Positions 51,969 through 57,874 of a DNA stretch of 64,000 bases are shown piece by piece; the first letter of the stretch is position 1; every line of letters begins with the position of its first letter. The stretch lies in the IMG/VR virus record IMGVR_UViG_3300027541_000009, positions 186,001-250,000 of that record; one strand, written 5' to 3'. Under the pieces are notes generated by a model. That model was given only the letters and a program-made list of their open reading frames with translations. It was not told where the DNA came from and did no database searches. The position numbers and the translations under genes are program-made.

Positions 51969-51993
51969 GACCCCACATCAGGGGTCTTTTTTT
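51969..51993 (+). terminator. Rho-independent terminator
   Basis: GACCCC-ACATCA-GGGGTC-T7 between convergent genes. Confidence 0.75.
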
Positions 51994-53005
51994 ATGCTTT
52001 TTCGTACCATCTATAACCATAAGCATTGCACCAAGTTTGCCCATTGTTTATACGTTGAATGTTGTTTTTGATATTAGCAACGCCACTATAATTACCATCA
52101 CCTTTGATAAAGAATGACGCCTCACTCATACTACCAAATTCTACGATTTCGTTGGTTTTAATACTTACACCATAGACAGGTTTCTTTCTTTTTTCGTTGC
52201 TAATTGCAGCAATTTTTTTATAGTGTTCTATTGAATTTGTTTTTGTTGCTGGTGTCCAATCTGTTGGTTTTGATCTAAAGAAATACCAACCTTTTACCTG
52301 TAATTTGCTATTGTCGGGACTGTTAAGTGAGTGATGAATAGCGTGATTATTTGTACGATTTCCTTGTATTTCTTCTGCCGCATCTGCCATTGATTTCCAC
52401 ATCTTTTTACGCCCTAATGTTGGATTGATTCCATATACAGCACCACGAACATTTACTCTCTTTTCTATTACTTTAGGTGTTTCACCTTTCCAAGCCCATC
52501 TATATCCAAGTGCTTGAAATGTCACACCTTTAATGCAAGCAATTATCCCAGTTTTTCCCTTTTTATTTCCACAACTATCAGCAGCAATTCCTACACTCTC
52601 ATAGTCTCTAACCCATTCACCTTCTAATGTATAACAACTCACTGCTTTGGAATGTGGATGATTTGCCCAATACTTTTTTGGTTTCTTTACACCATCACCA
52701 CCTAATGTAATGTTATATCCATTCTTACCACAAGTATCAAGTTTGTTTATCCAAAAGGTTTCACGTTCATTAACATTATCATCGCTACATTCTTCCAATA
52801 CTCTAAACTTAAAGTTATCTGCTCCGTACTTACATATGGCACGAACAATAGGCATAGAGTGAGATGAATTGTTCTCTGCTAAATTATCCTTACTTCTTGC
52901 GTTCTGTAGGTGTTGCTTCCATCTATCATATGGGTTGGGTTGTGTAGTCTTTCCCACATAGAGTTTGCTATTCTCAAGGTTGGTGATTGAGTAGATGTAT
53001 GCCAC
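51992..53005 (-). CDS. GIY-YIG homing endonuclease with NUMOD1-like repeats
   Basis: YIYSITN..N.KLYVGKT..RW.QH..KYG.DNF..LE..RE..WI..GYN; repeated F/Y.S...AA...I...GY.W modules; minus-strand TATAAATA at 53032-53039. Confidence 0.9.
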   Translation of the reverse strand: MAYIYSITNLENSKLYVGKTTQPNPYDRWKQHLQNARSKDNLAENNSSHSMPIVRAICKYGADNFKFRVLEECSDDNVNERETFWINKLDTCGKNGYNITLGGDGVKKPKKYWANHPHSKAVSCYTLEGEWVRDYESVGIAADSCGNKKGKTGIIACIKGVTFQALGYRWAWKGETPKVIEKRVNVRGAVYGINPTLGRKKMWKSMADAAEEIQGNRTNNHAIHHSLNSPDNSKLQVKGWYFFRSKPTDWTPATKTNSIEHYKKIAAISNEKRKKPVYGVSIKTNEIVEFGSMSEASFFIKGDGNYSGVANIKNNIQRINNGQTWCNAYGYRWYEKA

Positions 53006-53065: not shown

Positions 53066-53129
53066 TTTTCCACAATGTTGTGGAAAAAGTATAATAAATG
53101 TGTGGAAAAACTGTTAGAATTGTGGAAAA
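53066..53129. promoter_or_regulatory. Cluster of four DnaA-box-like 9-mers (TTTTCCACA)
   Basis: TTTTCCACA at 53066 (+) and TGTGGAAAA at 53079, 53101, 53121. Confidence 0.7.
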
Positions 53130-53174
53130 CTTATAGTCATTTAAATGTCTCTGGGGGTCGTTATCTTACAGGTC

Positions 53175-53204
53175 ATTCTATCACACTCGCCCCCAAAATG
53201 TCAA
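53175..53204 (-). promoter_or_regulatory. sigma70-type promoter pointing toward the DnaA boxes
   Basis: Minus strand TTGACA-18 nt-TAGAAT with extended TG. Confidence 0.6.
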
Positions 53205-53277
53205 TACCCCCGCGTTCTCAAATCCCCACAATCCCCCCGCATAAATCCACCGACCCCTGATAAATACCCCCAGACCA

Positions 53278-53306
53278 TTGACAAAAACCGCCCAGCATCT
53301 TATAGT
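53278..53306 (+). promoter_or_regulatory. sigma70-type promoter
   Basis: TTGACA-17 nt-TATAGT. Confidence 0.75.
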
Positions 53307-53333
53307 AGTTTCATAACACACAGGAGCGAACTT

Positions 53334-53507
53334 ATGTCAGTTGCATATCAGCAGGCACAGAAGCAGCGTTATAGGATTACTCTGGATCTATCAGTGTTCG
53401 GTGACTTCGACCCACACCAGATTGATTGGGAGAAGTTATTCAAGTTGGAACCTGCAGAGAAGTGTGATGCTTATGTTGAGGACCTAAGTACACCTGACCG
53501 ATGGTAA
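53334..53507 (+). CDS. Hypothetical protein
   Basis: AGGAG SD; start 53334 within track ORF 53145. Confidence 0.7.
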   Translation: MSVAYQQAQKQRYRITLDLSVFGDFDPHQIDWEKLFKLEPAEKCDAYVEDLSTPDRW

Positions 53508-54060: not shown

Positions 54061-54318
54061 ATGACTGTTACTTTCCAAGCAAATCTGACCGATACTGAGT
54101 ATAACGGTTGGACGAATTATGAGACCTGGAATGTTGCTCTCTGGATTCAAAATGATGAGGGTTTCTATAGTCTTGCCCGTGAGGTAGGTAACTATGAAGA
54201 CTTCGTAGATGCTCTGGAAGCGTGTTCTTTCAATTCCCTAAAAACGCCTGACGGAGTATCATTCAAAGACCCCAAGATTAACATCCTTGAGATTAACTCT
54301 GACGTGTTCGATTTCTGA
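54061..54318 (+). CDS. Hypothetical protein (YNGWTNYETWNVALWI.ND family)
   Basis: Widespread phage family motif. Confidence 0.8.
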   Translation: MTVTFQANLTDTEYNGWTNYETWNVALWIQNDEGFYSLAREVGNYEDFVDALEACSFNSLKTPDGVSFKDPKINILEINSDVFDF

Positions 54319-54404
54319 CCTTAAGTAACAACAAGGGGGGAATAAGATGCGCCCTATAAAGACACTTACTCAACACACACTGATTTACACTTTTCTTCTT
54401 CATT

Positions 54405-54575
54405 ATGTCCAAGCAAGTTCTTCTTTCTCTGCTGGCACAAGGTAACAACGGCAGCGAAATTCTGTCCATTCTGGATGCAATCGTTGCTGATAATGTTGCT
54501 GGTTTCGATTATATCGAGTCGCCGCAACTTGAGTCGGCACTGGGTATTCCTACTCTGGAAGAGATTGCCTTCTGA
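54405..54575 (+). CDS. Hypothetical protein (56 aa)
   Basis: Read manually; host-like codon use. Confidence 0.6.
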   Translation: MSKQVLLSLLAQGNNGSEILSILDAIVADNVAGFDYIESPQLESALGIPTLEEIAF

Positions 54576-54624
54576 TTGTTAGTAACTGTATGCCCCTTGG
54601 TTGTTAGACAGAGCGTGAGCGATG

Positions 54625-54653
54625 TTGACACTGAGGGGCGTTTATGTTATGAT
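54625..54653 (+). promoter_or_regulatory. Strong sigma70-type promoter with no immediate ORF
   Basis: TTGACA-17 nt-TATGAT with extended TG. Confidence 0.7.
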
Positions 54654-55130
54654 TGGCAGTGATGCTTATCGGCAGTTAATTGCCGCCGATTTGTTATAGC
54701 GCCGCGCGGCGTTGTTATAAGCCCGCCGATGCCCCCCCCCCTTATTAAAAAAAGCAAACTACCCTAACCTACAGAGGTGACAAATCGACCGATAAATATC
54801 AATCTCATAAAAATTTTCCGGAGGTATTTCTAAGTGTTTGGATGGATTCACAAGAACGGTAAGAGTCGCCCCAATAAAAATAAATCAAAAGGTGCAGCAA
54901 GAACTTGTGCTCAAAAGAATGCTGCGAGAAAGCGAAAGAAGAAAAAATGAGAAGGAGAACACCATATTGGAATTTTTGGAGAGTGATACTCGCAGGTTGG
55001 ATAATCAGATATCCAAAAACAATGGGTAGAATTGTATTAATCCCCCTGGGGGTTTTTGTTGTATTGATATATAATGCGTTAGTAAAATAAGTTTTTACTA
55101 AAAAATTTTCCGGAAAAAGTTTAATAAAAA

Positions 55131-55322
55131 ATGGAAAAAATATACCACATATACGCAGGGGATAAGTGTTTATTCCACTCTATTAAAGAAGATGAGTTCT
55201 CGACCACTTGGAATACTCTGAAGAATATGGTGGAAATTATGAAAACTGATTACAATGCAGAGGATTTATCCTATGAGGAACTTATTGTAAATAAGGAAAT
55301 TATTTTGAACTCCTCTCATTGA
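55131..55322 (+). CDS. Hypothetical protein
   Basis: 63 aa. Confidence 0.65.
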   Translation: MEKIYHIYAGDKCLFHSIKEDEFSTTWNTLKNMVEIMKTDYNAEDLSYEELIVNKEIILNSSH

Positions 55323-55372
55323 CAAAAGCATATATAGACTGTTAAAATTGATGTTGAAGGTTATTTTAACTT

Positions 55373-56140
55373 ATGGCAAAAGGATTCACTGTTAAAACTG
55401 TAGCACCAAAGAAGTCCACTGAAGAATGGGACTACGATGCGATTAAAGAAAGGATGAAGGGTAAGAGTATTGTATTCTGTCTTCCTGGACGAGGATGCTC
55501 TTATATCTTTTTGAAAGCATTTGTACAACTTTGTTTTGATATTGTACAAAATGGAATGAGTATTCAAATTTCTCAAGATTATTCATCAATGGTTAACTTT
55601 GCACGATGCAAGTGTCTTGGAGCAAATGTTCTCCGTGGACCAAACCAAAAACCTTGGGATGGAAAACTTCAATATGATTATCAGCTCTGGATTGATAATG
55701 ATATTGTTTTTGATTCTAACAAGTTCTGGCAGCTTTGTGATTTAGCTCTTTCTGCTGAAGGAGAAGAGAAAGAAGTTGTTGCAGGTTGGTACGCAACAGA
55801 AGATGGTCACACAACTTCTGTCGCACACTGGTTAGAAGAAGATGATTTCCGTAAGAATGGTGGTGTAATGAACCACGAAACTGTGGAATCAATCAGCAAG
55901 CGTCGTAAGCCATTCACTGTAGATTACACAGGTTTTGGATGGGTTATGATTAAGAATGGAGTCTTTGAGAATCTTGAGTATCCTTGGTTTGCTCCGAAGA
56001 TGCAAGTCTTTGAGTCTGGTAATGTTCAAGATATGTGTGGCGAAGATGTTTCATTCTGTCTTGATGCCAAGGATGCGGGGTTTGATATCTGGTGCGATCC
56101 TCGCATTAGAGTTGGACATGAAAAAACTCGCATTATCTAA
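55373..56140 (+). CDS. Glycosyltransferase-like (GT-A fold) protein
   Basis: WIDNDIVF (DxD), TGFG..MIK..VFE, GEDVSFC, D....VGH; TTGACA-18-TAAAAT promoter at 55319. Confidence 0.75.
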   Translation: MAKGFTVKTVAPKKSTEEWDYDAIKERMKGKSIVFCLPGRGCSYIFLKAFVQLCFDIVQNGMSIQISQDYSSMVNFARCKCLGANVLRGPNQKPWDGKLQYDYQLWIDNDIVFDSNKFWQLCDLALSAEGEEKEVVAGWYATEDGHTTSVAHWLEEDDFRKNGGVMNHETVESISKRRKPFTVDYTGFGWVMIKNGVFENLEYPWFAPKMQVFESGNVQDMCGEDVSFCLDAKDAGFDIWCDPRIRVGHEKTRII

Positions 56141-56428: not shown

Positions 56429-56656
56429 ATGCTTCAATTAAATCCACAAATCCCAACCATTACCTTTTGGGGTAATGGTTGGGCTTTTTTTGTAATTGAC
56501 CGTTCTCAAGAACACGATCTTGAATGGGTAGTTTTTCTAGATAGTAATGGGGAATGTTGGACTTTTAAAAACTCTGATATTCGTATTCAGAAGAACTATA
56601 CTCTTCATAGAAATAATCCAATCGGATTTTCTTCATGTACTACTCAGATCCAATAG
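56429..56656 (+). CDS. Hypothetical protein (MLQLNP.IP family)
   Basis: 75 aa. Confidence 0.65.
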   Translation: MLQLNPQIPTITFWGNGWAFFVIDRSQEHDLEWVVFLDSNGECWTFKNSDIRIQKNYTLHRNNPIGFSSCTTQIQ

Positions 56657-57273
56657 ATGAATGGAACTCAATTCACAAGGAAGATCTGTGGGTATATAAT
56701 AAACTGTTTCTAGCACGCTCTCTGGGGCACCTATGTGGTCCTGTAGGCGCATCTGTACCATCTCCAGACTACTATATCGTCCGACCAAGTATTAATTTAC
56801 TCGGTATGGGACGATTTTCTCGTATAGAGTGGATTGATAATTCTACAGATCATCTTCACCCAGCAGAATTTTGGTGTGAGATATTTCAAGGAGAACATAT
56901 TAGTGTAGATTTCAGAGATAGAAAAGCATAATTGGTTGTCTTAGGTGATAGATATGATAATAAGTCATTGTATAAATGGAAGAAATGGACTAAAATTGAC
57001 AAAGATATTGAATTTCCTTTGATTCTAAACAACTTAAAAGGTAATTATGAGTGGATTAACTGTGAATTTATTGGCAATAAACTGATTGAAGTTCATTTTA
57101 GACGCAATCCAGACTTTCGTTATGGCAATTCAGTTGCAATTCCCGTTTGGAAAGGAGAAAAAATACAAAAAATAGAAGATTTTACCTTTGTTAAAGACGA
57201 AGACTATCTAAGAGAAGGGTTTTACATCGACACCCGGGATAGCAACCCCGTAAAAAGTTCTGATTTTAACTAA
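56635..57273 (+). pseudogene. ATP-grasp-like gene interrupted by in-frame TAA at 56929-56931 (or sequencing error)
   Basis: Two track ORFs in the same frame separated by one stop; YIVRP..NL.GMG, EIFQGEHISVD and IN.EFIG..LIEVH.R read as one domain. Confidence 0.55.
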
Positions 57274-57472: not shown

Positions 57473-57874
57473 ATGCCTTTAGAAAGGGTAAGTAAAGGAT
57501 TTAAAGACATTAGTATGTCATTTCAGAGCAATCCTCTGACTAATGACTTGATTGCTATTAACAATGCAAATGCGATTGCTCGTTCCATTCGAAATATTGT
57601 CTTTACTTACCCTGGTGAAAAATTTTTTAATGAAGGTTTTGGTTCCAAAATTAATCGCTCTCTCTTTGAAAACCTAGATCAACTGACAGCTGAAAACATT
57701 AAGGATGAAATAGAGTATTCTATTTCAAACTATGAACCAAGAGTTTCTTTAAATCAAGTGGTCGTAATTCCAGATTATGATAACAATTCATTTGACGTAT
57801 TAATTTCTTATAGAATTGTCGGTATTGATGTTACACCTCAACAGTTACAGTTTGTTTTGCAACCTATTAGGTAA
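57473..57874 (+). CDS. gp25: Baseplate wedge subunit gp25
   Basis: FKDIS.SF..NP..NDL, AI.RSIRNIV.T.PGEK.F...FGS, YEPRV; late promoter ATAAATA at 57447. Confidence 0.92.
   Translation: MPLERVSKGFKDISMSFQSNPLTNDLIAINNANAIARSIRNIVFTYPGEKFFNEGFGSKINRSLFENLDQLTAENIKDEIEYSISNYEPRVSLNQVVVIPDYDNNSFDVLISYRIVGIDVTPQQLQFVLQPIR

What the first reader, a model, noticed from the sequence alone, without database searches (positions are those of the whole stretch)
54625..54830. GC-rich, ORF-less structured transcript with a C10 run at the end of the early island
Seen in sequence: a near-consensus promoter (TTGACA-17-TATGAT) is followed by the most GC-rich stretch I noticed, with hairpins ATCGGC..GGCAG-TTAA-TTGCC..GCCGAT and AGCGCCG-CG-CGGCGTT, then C10 (54732-54741) and A7. 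There is no plausible ORF for about 290 bp. Inference: an undescribed ncRNA or an origin primer RNA, 1.5 kb from the DnaA-box cluster.
Basis: partly seen in the sequence, partly recalled or inferred. Interest (0 to 1): 0.6.

Follow-up and report, generated by a model that had tools for sequence, protein, structure and literature searches.

The report
Conserved non-coding control region of cyanophages
The GC-rich, gene-free stretch is real. It belongs to a single-copy non-coding module found in apparently all marine T4-like cyanophages and is not a folded RNA; it is most likely a DNA-level control site, possibly the phage's transcription-primed replication origin, and no accessible source describes it.

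Summary
The promoter is at 54625-54653, C10 at 54732-54741 and A7 at 54747-54753, and the gap between ORFs is 258 bp. The stretch 54651-54744 is the most GC-rich 90 nt of the window.

The window comes from a T4-like cyanomyovirus. The region is a single-copy module: 286 cyanophage genomes hold it once each, as do hundreds of IMG/VR contigs. No Rfam family matches it, and no searchable paper contains the core sequence.

The module has a fixed order:
- an early sigma-70 promoter;
- about 65-85 nt of G/T-rich, poorly conserved leader;
- a G·C homopolymer tract, which is a C-run or a G-run at the same site;
- a TATA/A-tract;
- a nearly invariant G-free 16-mer (54758-54773);
- a 10-12-nt block that occurs in about eight discrete alleles;
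- a -10-like/late-promoter-like site;
- an AT-rich leader and the first small ORF.

Spacing is almost free of indels over about 80 bp. The 16-mer shows no excess pairing with its flanks.

Cyanobacterial-type DnaA boxes are about 25-fold enriched in the 2 kb upstream. The module also lies just upstream of gp25/gp6, where, from memory, T4 oriF and oriE lie.

My best reading is a DNA-level cis element, most likely a transcription-primed origin (confidence 0.35). The main rival is a compound early/late promoter-operator region (0.28).

The parts
53066..53129 (.). Cluster of four cyanobacterial-type DnaA boxes (one forward, three reverse).
   Evidence: Four of the nine matches in the 205-kb genome lie here. 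Across 279 non-redundant loci, boxes occur at 0.59 per kb in the 2 kb upstream of the core and 0.024 per kb downstream; a control pattern gives 0.02-0.03 per kb. However, 57 of 90 loci with a full 2 kb upstream have none. In Syn9, 3 of 4 genomic boxes flank the element.
54592..54639 (+). Inverted repeat GCCCCT / AGGGGC enclosing the -35 box. This is a PeSL-like stem-loop-plus-early-promoter arrangement.
   Evidence: Read from the sequence. Many homologues have G-rich/C-rich arms flanking TTGACA. PeSL motifs of T4-type phages are described in PMC4122927.
54625..54653 (+). Early sigma-70-type promoter P1 (TTGACA, 17 nt, TATGAT, with TG extension). The inferred start is near 54658-54661, within GGCAGT.
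   Evidence: A strict promoter of this type lies within 256 nt upstream of the 16-mer in 140 of 259 non-redundant loci, against 6 of 259 downstream. The distance from the -10 end to the 16-mer peaks at 70-89 nt. The start site is inferred, not mapped.
54655..54731 (+).
   Evidence: The hairpins are not conserved. In the family this segment is G/T-rich and A-poor, with GC peaking at 0.72 just before the TATA/A-tract.
54732..54741 (.). C10 homopolymer, a G·C tract at a fixed position in the module.
   Evidence: A C-run of 5 or more is present in 72 of 170 non-redundant loci. Most C-runs of 4 or more end 15-18 nt before the 16-mer. A G-run of 5 or more is present in 50 of 170 and can occupy the same site.
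54742..54753 (.). TTATT plus A7, the TATA/A-tract.
   Evidence: The A-run of 4-7 A starts 10-11 nt before the 16-mer in 163 of 170 loci. The motif shows no strand bias genome-wide, so it is not a standard late promoter.
54758..54773 (+). Conserved G-free 16-mer ACTACCCTAACCTACA, the core of the module.
   Evidence: It is single-copy in the window and in the genome. The 21-mer that overlaps it, extending into the adjacent block, occurs exactly in at least 120 IMG/VR contigs, and the 16-mer itself in another 120-row sample. A 41-nt query finds 286 cyanophage genomes, one place each. No cyanobacterial genome holds it. It shows no excess pairing with its flanks.
54774..54785 (+). Allele-variable 10-12-nt block. 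Here it is the GAGGTGACAA type.
   Evidence: About eight discrete alleles exist, each shared by loci with different flanks.
54791..54799 (+). GATAAATA late-promoter-like motif overlapping the family's -10-like ATAT (putative P2).
   Evidence: ATAAATA occurs 54 times on the gene strand and 6 times on the other strand of this genome. Counting from the base after the 16-mer, ATAT starts at position 23 in 101 of 172 loci. TATAAT with at most one mismatch starts at position 24 in 58 of 172. A late-like motif starts at position 19 in 26 of 172.
54809..54833 (+). A-run, TTTCC and a GGAGG ribosome-binding site. This is the AT-rich leader of the first small-ORF cassette.
   Evidence: An A-run is common at positions 36-38 after the 16-mer and TTTCC at position 42. 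GC falls to 0.09 in this 10-nt bin across the family.
54834..54950 (+). First downstream gene here: a 38-aa, very basic peptide of the WIHKNGKSRP family.
   Evidence: Relatives with ATG starts are visible. The identity of the first downstream gene differs between phages.

Best explanation
The interval is the upstream two-thirds of a single-copy, family-wide cis-acting module of T4-like cyanophages. The module acts mainly as double-stranded DNA with fixed geometry, not as a folded RNA. My preferred mechanism is a transcription-primed or transcription-activated replication origin of the T4 oriF/oriG kind. Shown: host sigma-70 RNA polymerase has a near-consensus promoter P1 at 54625-54653. It faces a 65-105-nt GC-rich segment that ends in a G·C homopolymer tract. 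A TATA/A-tract, the invariant 16-mer and a very AT-rich 20-40 bp follow at fixed spacing. DnaA boxes are concentrated in the 2 kb upstream in about a third of lineages. Inferred: the P1 transcript either stays hybridised or opens the duplex at the GC-to-AT step. The 16-mer is the docking or processing site for a conserved factor such as an initiator, a helicase loader or a nuclease that trims the primer. The AT-rich segment unwinds, and leading-strand synthesis starts there. The same DNA also carries a second, -10-only/late-like promoter that serves the small-ORF cassettes downstream.
For: The element is universal and single-copy. It occurs once in each of 286 cyanophage genomes and once in this genome. 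It does not depend on a particular neighbouring gene. P1 is conserved at a constrained distance from the core. No indels occur between the A-tract, the 16-mer, the -10-like ATAT and the next A-run across about 170 divergent loci. The C-run and G-run are interchangeable at one site. Composition shifts sharply from a G/T-rich segment with 72% GC to an A-rich segment with 9% GC. DnaA boxes are about 25-fold enriched just upstream, including in Syn9 and S-CREM1. No RNA structure is conserved. A review cites Weigele 2007 as predicting a single origin in Syn9 (PMC2984593). From my own memory, and not tested here, T4 oriF lies beside gene 25 and oriE beside gene 6. The module sits 0.8-2.7 kb upstream of gp25/gp6.
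Against: There is no direct evidence of replication initiation. GC skew is monotonic in this genome and in Syn9, so it is uninformative. As far as I recall, T4 origins have no conserved sequence block like the 16-mer. In the window the leader RNA is not G-rich (GC skew -0.07), and C-runs outnumber G-runs, which does not favour a stable R-loop. The DnaA boxes lie at variable distance (0.1-2 kb). They are absent, under the strict pattern, from 57 of 90 loci that have a full 2 kb upstream. The fixed distance from the 16-mer to a -10-like element fits a promoter-operator equally well. Metatranscriptome contigs cover the region at depths similar to its neighbours, which shows neither a primer nor an abundant small RNA.
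Confidence: 0.35

Rival explanations
1. The module is a compound early/late promoter-operator region. P1 (early) and P2 (-10-only/late-like, at 54791-54799) drive the small-ORF cassettes and possibly read on towards the baseplate genes. The 16-mer is the binding site of a conserved host or phage transcription factor placed at about -41 to -43 relative to the P2 start, as for a class II activator. The G·C tract and A-tract tune DNA shape or spacing.
For: The -10-like ATAT lies at a fixed position after the 16-mer (position 23 in 101 of 172 loci). It is followed by an A-run where a start site would fall, then TTTCC and a ribosome-binding site. In the window the site is a perfect late-promoter motif of a class with a 54:6 strand bias. 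The centre of the conserved 12-mer falls about 29.5 bp before the -10-like hexamer, which is the class II geometry (my arithmetic). A review describes paired early and late promoters for cyanophage genes (PMC2984593).
Against: It does not explain why one promoter region should be the most conserved non-coding sequence of the family while the gene it serves changes. It does not explain the single-copy status of the site or the DnaA-box association. The 16-mer is not palindromic and fails the NtcA and Pho-box patterns. Only 15% of loci have a true late motif.
Confidence: 0.28
2. The module works at the RNA level without a fold. The G-free, C/A-rich 16-mer is a single-stranded motif in the P1 leader. 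It could be a ribosome standby site or translation enhancer, a stability or processing determinant, or the seed of a leader-derived small RNA that pairs with a G-rich partner.
For: A conserved promoter lies upstream. The region is present in four metatranscriptomes with non-uniform depth along the locus. The 16-mer shows no excess pairing with its flanks. Natural variants of the 16-mer are mostly C-to-T and A-to-G, which would keep wobble pairing with a fixed partner. Some lineages have terminator-like hairpins 45-70 nt after the core.
Against: A C-run and a G-run at the same site behave very differently in RNA. The strict indel-free spacing is unusual for an unstructured RNA motif. No conserved terminator is present. 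Contig depth is no higher than that of neighbouring genes. No complementary sequence was found in any cyanobacterial genome at the 19-mer level. Transitions are also the commonest mutations in any case.
Confidence: 0.17
3. The module is a recombination anchor. It would be a conserved promoter/stem-loop and core sequence that serves mainly as a homology patch for shuffling small-ORF cassettes at the edge of a hyperplastic region, as proposed for PeSL motifs.
For: The content on both sides is highly variable: about 3.5 kb of inserts lie upstream in the window relative to Syn9, and the first downstream gene differs between phages. Discrete block alleles are recombined with different flanks. De Bruijn contigs of four runs all break at the core, so co-occurring strains share it. 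P1 has a PeSL-like look.
Against: PeSLs are multi-copy within a genome, and this core is single-copy. Homology patches need no fixed internal geometry, no G-free 16-mer and no A-tract register. Shuffling may be a consequence of conservation rather than its cause.
Confidence: 0.1
4. One reading: a structured, ORF-less non-coding RNA whose hairpins and C10 run are the functional parts.
For: The promoter and hairpins are present in the window, and the fold z-score is -2.05. An inner GGCA/TGCC hairpin recurs in about half of the homologues, and compact forms such as Syn9 have a G5C/GC5 version.
Against: No covariation was found, and only an invariant 4-bp hairpin appears in the consensus fold. The hairpins pair in 52-66% of sequences, close to shuffles. 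The mean stem at the CAG motif is 4.18 bp against 4.01 bp in chimeric controls. No Rfam match was found, even at E-values up to 10.
Confidence: 0.04

Closest known systems
T4 replication origins oriF (uvsY) and oriG (gene 34): a promoter plus a downstream DNA-unwinding element with an R-loop primer. Also oriE, with the early RNAE/repE transcripts. From my own knowledge of the T4 literature.
   Same: A host-polymerase promoter faces an unwinding-prone segment some tens of bp downstream. The region is non-coding or lightly coding. It lies beside baseplate wedge genes (25 and 6). The transcript doubles as mRNA for small early proteins.
   Different: T4 uses MotA-dependent middle promoters, which cyanophages lack. 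As far as I recall, T4 origins have no conserved 16-mer, no homopolymer tract and no DnaA boxes, and there are several of them. Origin activity has not been shown here.
ColE1 RNA II origin and the mitochondrial LSP/CSB primer system
   Same: A promoter-driven transcript crosses a GC-rich or homopolymer G·C tract. The presumed RNA-to-DNA switch occurs next to an A-run.
   Different: Those systems need a G-rich RNA and, in ColE1, a folded RNA. Here the tract is more often C than G in the RNA, and no fold is conserved.
PeSL (promoter-early stem-loop) cassettes of T4-type phages (PMC2839356, PMC4122927)
   Same: A near-consensus sigma-70 promoter is associated with a G-run/loop/C-run stem-loop, at the edge of a hyperplastic region full of ORFans.
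   Different: PeSLs are repeated many times per genome and consist only of promoter and stem-loop. The 16-mer module is single-copy and extends 130 bp beyond the promoter.
NtcA-type class II activated promoters of cyanobacteria (GTA-N8-TAC, about 22 nt, TAN3T)
   Same: The 16-mer reads ACTA-N8-TACA, and a -10-like hexamer follows at 22-24 nt, so the site centre falls near -41.5.
   Different: The left half-site lacks the G of GTA in nearly all copies. The N8 is invariant here but free in NtcA sites. The site is not a palindrome.
Known cyanophage RNA elements (CfrI, PhotoRC-II, wcaG, manA, glnA riboswitch, abiF; listed in PMC9964418)
   Same: They are non-coding elements conserved among T4-like cyanophages.
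   Different: All of them are structured RNAs with Rfam models. None matches this region, and none lies at this locus.
Phase-variable promoters with homopolymer tracts, for example the Neisseria and Bordetella fim/opc type
   Same: A C/G homopolymer of variable length (5-10) sits just upstream of a TATA-like element.
   Different: No -35 element lies at a workable distance. No length heterogeneity was seen in the four runs laid on the window.

Membership tests
Any Rfam RNA family | A covariance-model match at or near the gathering score | tested here: not met
   Only two tRNAs match in the whole window. Within 54300-55400 at E-values up to 10, nothing overlaps the module except an 11.6-bit chance hit on the minus strand.
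Structured ncRNA (generic) | A conserved secondary structure supported by compensatory changes | tested here: not met
   RNAalifold gives 4 invariant pairs and a covariation term of 0. The named hairpins behave like shuffles. The 5' hairpin test gives 4.18 bp against 4.01 bp.
Sigma-70 early promoter | TTGACA, 16-18 nt, TATAAT-like, conserved in homologues | tested here: met
   11 of 12 with TG extension. Present in 140 of 259 loci upstream and 6 of 259 downstream.
T4-type late promoter (cyanophage form ATAAATA/CTAAATA) | The motif on the gene strand at a fixed place upstream of a gene | tested here: inconclusive
   The window has GATAAATA at 54791-54798. The motif class is strongly strand-biased (54:6 and 20:3). 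Only 26 of 172 homologues have it at that position. The upstream TATA/A-tract is not of this class, as it shows no strand bias.
R-loop/transcription-primed phage origin (T4 oriF/oriG type) | A promoter followed by a DNA-unwinding element | tested here: met
   P1 is followed by a composition step from 72% GC to 9% GC at fixed positions. This is anatomy only.
R-loop/transcription-primed phage origin (T4 oriF/oriG type) | A persistent RNA-DNA hybrid and initiation of DNA synthesis at the site | not testable with these tools
   Only assembled contigs of RNA libraries were available. GC skew is uninformative.
R-loop/transcription-primed phage origin (T4 oriF/oriG type) | A G-rich non-template strand favouring hybrid stability (ColE1/CSB-like variant) | tested here: inconclusive
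   Family mean is G 0.28-0.31 against C 0.16-0.18 upstream of the tract. The window itself has GC skew -0.07, and C-runs are more frequent than G-runs.
DnaA-dependent origin | A cluster of DnaA boxes adjacent to the unwinding element | tested here: inconclusive
   Enrichment upstream is about 25-fold. The distance is 0.1-2 kb, and 57 of 90 loci have no strict box.
NtcA-activated promoter | GTA-N8-TAC palindrome centred near -41.5 | tested here: not met
   The spacing fits, but the left half is CTA (or AGT/TTC variants) and the N8 is invariant.
Cyanobacterial Pho box | Two or more direct repeats of the CTTAACCT type with an 11-bp period | tested here: not met
   There is one near-match unit, and a second weaker unit at a 9-bp period (read).
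PeSL cassette | Many copies per genome of stem-loop plus early promoter | tested here: inconclusive
   P1 with its flanking inverted repeat resembles a PeSL, and 15 similar promoters exist in the window. The conserved core beyond the promoter is single-copy.
Leader peptide / small ORF | A reading frame conserved across homologues | tested here: not met
   The window has a 12-codon frame from ATG at 54730 to the TAA inside the 16-mer. The A-run length varies from 4 to 7, and frames differ between homologues.

The most novel reading that the evidence does not exclude
All marine T4-like cyanophages share one dedicated origin of replication. It would be built from a host-type early promoter, a G·C homopolymer/A-tract boundary and an invariant 16-nt docking sequence, often assisted by host DnaA boxes. 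The roughly eight alleles of the adjacent 10-12-nt block would be specificity determinants matched to lineage-specific initiator or loader proteins. This would be a sequence-defined origin in a phage group whose model member, T4, has only loosely defined origins.
Probability: 0.2. Interest if true: 0.8.

Novelty: new variant of a known kind. Interest (0 to 1): 0.62.

Why it matters
Marine cyanomyoviruses are among the most abundant viruses in the ocean, yet how they start DNA replication and switch transcription classes without MotA/AsiA is unknown. This module is a single, sequence-defined non-coding landmark present in apparently every member of the family. It gives a concrete target for origin mapping, for factor pull-downs and for the cyanophage genetics that now exist. 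It is also a universal 16-nt signature, which is useful for recognising and orienting cyanomyovirus contigs in metagenomes. If the DnaA-box link holds, it would show a T4-like phage recruiting the host initiator.

Tried and rejected
- **Rfam.** I searched at gathering threshold and at E-values up to 10 and found nothing.
- **Near-identity search.** Megablast of the region against phage genomes found nothing. Only word-11 blastn revealed the short conserved core.
- **Pairing of the core.** Pairing with the upstream or downstream flanks gives z-scores near 0.
- **Leader-peptide reading.** Frames are not conserved.
- **TATA/A-tract as a late promoter.** The motif has no strand bias, unlike ATAAATA and CTAAATA.
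- **NtcA site and Pho box.** Defining bases or the repeat period are not met.
- **ECF-type promoter reading** (AAC, 17 nt, CGAC). The spacing is 17-19 nt and varies with the block allele, so I dropped it.
- **Host origin of the core.** A 19-mer scan of 185,579 species genomes gave five hits. All are aquatic MAG contigs that look like mis-binned phage, and none is in cyanobacteria.
- **GC skew.** It is monotonic in this genome and in Syn9. The detrended extremes in Syn9 are at 44 and 102 kb, not at the element at 53.5 kb.
- **Metatranscriptomes.** Four RNA runs hold the locus, but only as contigs. The shared contig break at 54761 is a de Bruijn branch at the conserved core, not a transcript end. 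A 247-nt 'joint' and the loose ends come from co-occurring related strains.
- **Literature.** No paper in the library holds the core sequence. Doron 2016 (Syn9 transcriptome) and Mann 2005 are not held. No paper links DnaA boxes and cyanophages in a relevant way.

Full report
**What is there.** The window is part of a 205-kb IMG/VR virus record. Its gene content and nearest relatives place it among the T4-like cyanomyoviruses (Kyanoviridae). gp25 is at 57473 and a gp6-like gene follows it. The best nucleotide matches are Synechococcus and Prochlorococcus phages.

- a TTGACA / 17 nt / TATGAT promoter with a TG extension (54625-54653);
- two sets of inverted repeats;
- C10 (54732-54741) and A7 (54747-54753).

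The stretch 54651-54744 is the most GC-rich 90 nt of the 64-kb window, at 58.9% against 36.9%. C10 is the longest G/C homopolymer of the genome. The ORF-free gap is 258 bp (54576-54833). It ends at a small basic ORF that is conserved in relatives.

**It is a family-wide module.**
- Megablast found nothing. Word-11 blastn picked up a short intergenic match in five cyanophages of different genera.
- Their alignment showed an invariant 22-mer.
- That core is single-copy in the window and in the genome.
- A 41-nt query finds it in 286 phage records. All are cyanophages, each has one place, and almost all matches are unannotated.
- In cultured phages it always occupies an unusually long intergenic gap of about 180-260 bp. 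Examples are the gap between gp90 and gp91 of Syn9 and the gap between 'gp88' and 'gp91' of S-RIM8.
- It lies 0.8-2.7 kb upstream of the baseplate wedge genes.
- The neighbours are not fixed. The Syn9 gp90 homologue lies 3.5 kb upstream in the window, gp91-93 are absent, and the first downstream gene belongs to at least four unrelated small-protein families.

**Anatomy of the module**, reading 5' to 3':
1. An early promoter, often with G-rich and C-rich arms flanking the -35 box.
2. A GGCAGT motif at or near the predicted start.
3. A G/T-rich, A-poor leader whose sequence is free but whose length is constrained. The distance from the -10 end to the 16-mer is 70-89 nt in 85 of 140 loci.
4. A GC peak of 72% that often ends in a homopolymer. 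A C-run of 5 or more occurs in 72 of 170 non-redundant loci. A G-run of 5 or more occurs in 50 of 170 and can sit at the same site.
5. A TATA/A-tract whose A-run starts 10-11 nt before the core in 163 of 170 loci.
6. The G-free 16-mer (window 54758-54773).
7. A 10-12-nt block that occurs in about eight discrete alleles, each shared by loci whose flanks differ.
8. A -10-like ATAT starting at position 23 after the 16-mer. In the window it overlaps GATAAATA, the late-promoter form.
9. An A-run at positions 36-38, then TTTCC at position 42 and a ribosome-binding site.

Between the A-tract and the second A-run there are essentially no indels, although the phages are highly divergent.

When loci are anchored on the downstream block instead of the core, the 16-mer does vary. 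The 5' third is free and the 3' CTAYA is nearly fixed. Most changes are C-to-T or A-to-G. S-CREM1 has a strongly diverged copy.

**Not a structured RNA.**
- No Rfam family matches.
- The consensus fold of 112 homologues has only an invariant 4-bp hairpin inside the core, and covariation is zero.
- A hairpin at the CAG motif is at most marginal. A GGCA/TGCC or G5C/GC5 version does recur in part of the family, including Syn9.
- The core shows no excess pairing with either flank.
- The window's own leader folds only 2 SD better than shuffles.
- A C-run and a G-run at the same position, together with the rigid spacing, point to a property of the duplex rather than of an RNA.

**Transcription.** Four riverine metatranscriptome runs hold the whole locus at 99% identity or better. 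Depth differs several-fold between adjacent contigs, and the minus-strand endonuclease region is lowest. This fits transcription through the module at a level similar to its neighbours. However, these are assembled contigs. They show no ends and no strand, and DNA carry-over cannot be excluded. All runs break contigs at 54761 because co-occurring strains share the core.

**DnaA boxes.**
- The window has four cyanobacterial-type boxes within 64 bp at 53066-53129, out of nine in the genome.
- Over 279 non-redundant loci the boxes are about 25-fold enriched in the 2 kb upstream of the core. The rates are 0.59 per kb upstream and 0.024 per kb downstream, and a control pattern gives 0.02-0.03 per kb.
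- Only about a third of the loci with a full 2 kb upstream have two or more boxes, and 57 of 90 have none.
- Syn9 has 3 of its 4 genomic boxes within 1.1 kb of the element. S-CREM1 has five within 1.1 kb upstream.

**Interpretation.** The features that need explaining are these:
- universality;
- single copy;
- independence from the downstream gene;
- a conserved promoter at a constrained distance;
- a sharp GC-to-AT step with a homopolymer and an A-tract in fixed register;
- an invariant non-palindromic 16-mer;
- allele-like variation next to the 16-mer;
- the DnaA-box neighbourhood;
- the position beside gp25/gp6.

A transcription-primed or transcription-activated origin of the T4 oriF/oriG/oriE kind accounts for most of them, so it is my first choice at 0.35. 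A review reports that a single origin was predicted for Syn9 (PMC2984593), but I could not read the primary paper to compare positions. The T4 map positions of oriF and oriE are from my memory.

The main rival is a compound early/late promoter-operator in which the 16-mer is a factor site near -41.5 of a second promoter (0.28). It explains the downstream geometry well. It does not explain why the site is unique and outlives its target genes.

An unstructured RNA motif or seed is possible (0.17). So is a pure recombination anchor (0.10). GC skew cannot discriminate between these readings.

**Novelty.** No searchable paper contains the core sequence. The cyanophage RNA elements listed in recent genome papers do not include it. 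Two key papers, the Syn9 genome and the Syn9 transcriptome, were not readable, so prior mention cannot be excluded. As a kind of thing (origin or control region) it is known. As a sequence-defined, family-wide module with this architecture it appears to be undescribed.

Noticed in passing
window 53066-53129: Four cyanobacterial-type DnaA boxes (TTTTCCACA; one forward, three reverse, spaced 13-22 bp) lie in a divergent intergenic region. They overlap promoter-like sites for ORF 53145-53507. Similar clusters sit upstream of the module in many cyanophages, including S-SM2, P-TIM68, S-RIM2, ACG-2014d, Syn9 and S-CREM1.
   Followed up: partly
window 51992-53005 (minus strand): A GIY-YIG homing endonuclease (Seg-like; Pfam GIY-YIG 2e-14, phrog_314). 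It is the only long minus-strand gene in this stretch. It is part of about 3.5 kb inserted here relative to Syn9.
   Followed up: partly
window 54809-54824 and 55100-55116: A local repeated motif (A-run, TTTCCGG, then A or AGG) precedes each small-ORF cassette after the module. In some relatives the same slot holds a full DnaA-box-like TTTTCCACAGGTA. Genome-wide the motif occurs only here.
   Followed up: partly
window 54834-54950, 54947-55090, 55131-55322: Three small conserved ORFs follow the module. The first is a 38-aa, very basic peptide of the WIHKNGKSRP family, with a GTG start here and ATG in relatives. The second is a roughly 47-aa membrane peptide with a PYWNFW motif that overlaps the first by 4 nt. 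The third is a 63-aa phrog_2626 protein. Their order and presence differ between phages.
   Followed up: partly
window 55373-56140: A 255-aa protein of unknown function (phrog_1574, with a faint glycosyltransferase-like hit). It is 87-100% identical across the best 80 of at least 600 IMG/VR loci, which is unusually conserved for this variable region.
   Followed up: no
window 56635-56931 and 56932-57273: Two adjacent ORFs match the first and second halves of one PHROG family (phrog_3577). They are separated only by an in-frame TAA (56929-56931) followed directly by TTG. This could be a split gene, a read-through candidate or a sequencing error.
   Followed up: no
window 54732-54741, and homologous loci (e.g. 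L113, L121, L175): The homopolymer at this site varies from 5 to 10 or more C among relatives and is replaced by a G-run in others. This length and strand polymorphism is of the kind seen in slipped-strand switches. No length heterogeneity was seen in the four runs laid on the window.
   Followed up: partly
L134-L138 (genome-contig hits): The 19-mer core occurs in five MAG contigs. They are labelled Flavobacteriaceae, Polynucleobacter, Pseudobdellovibrionaceae, Woesearchaeota and Euryarchaeota. These are most likely cyanophage contigs mis-binned into aquatic MAGs.
   Followed up: no
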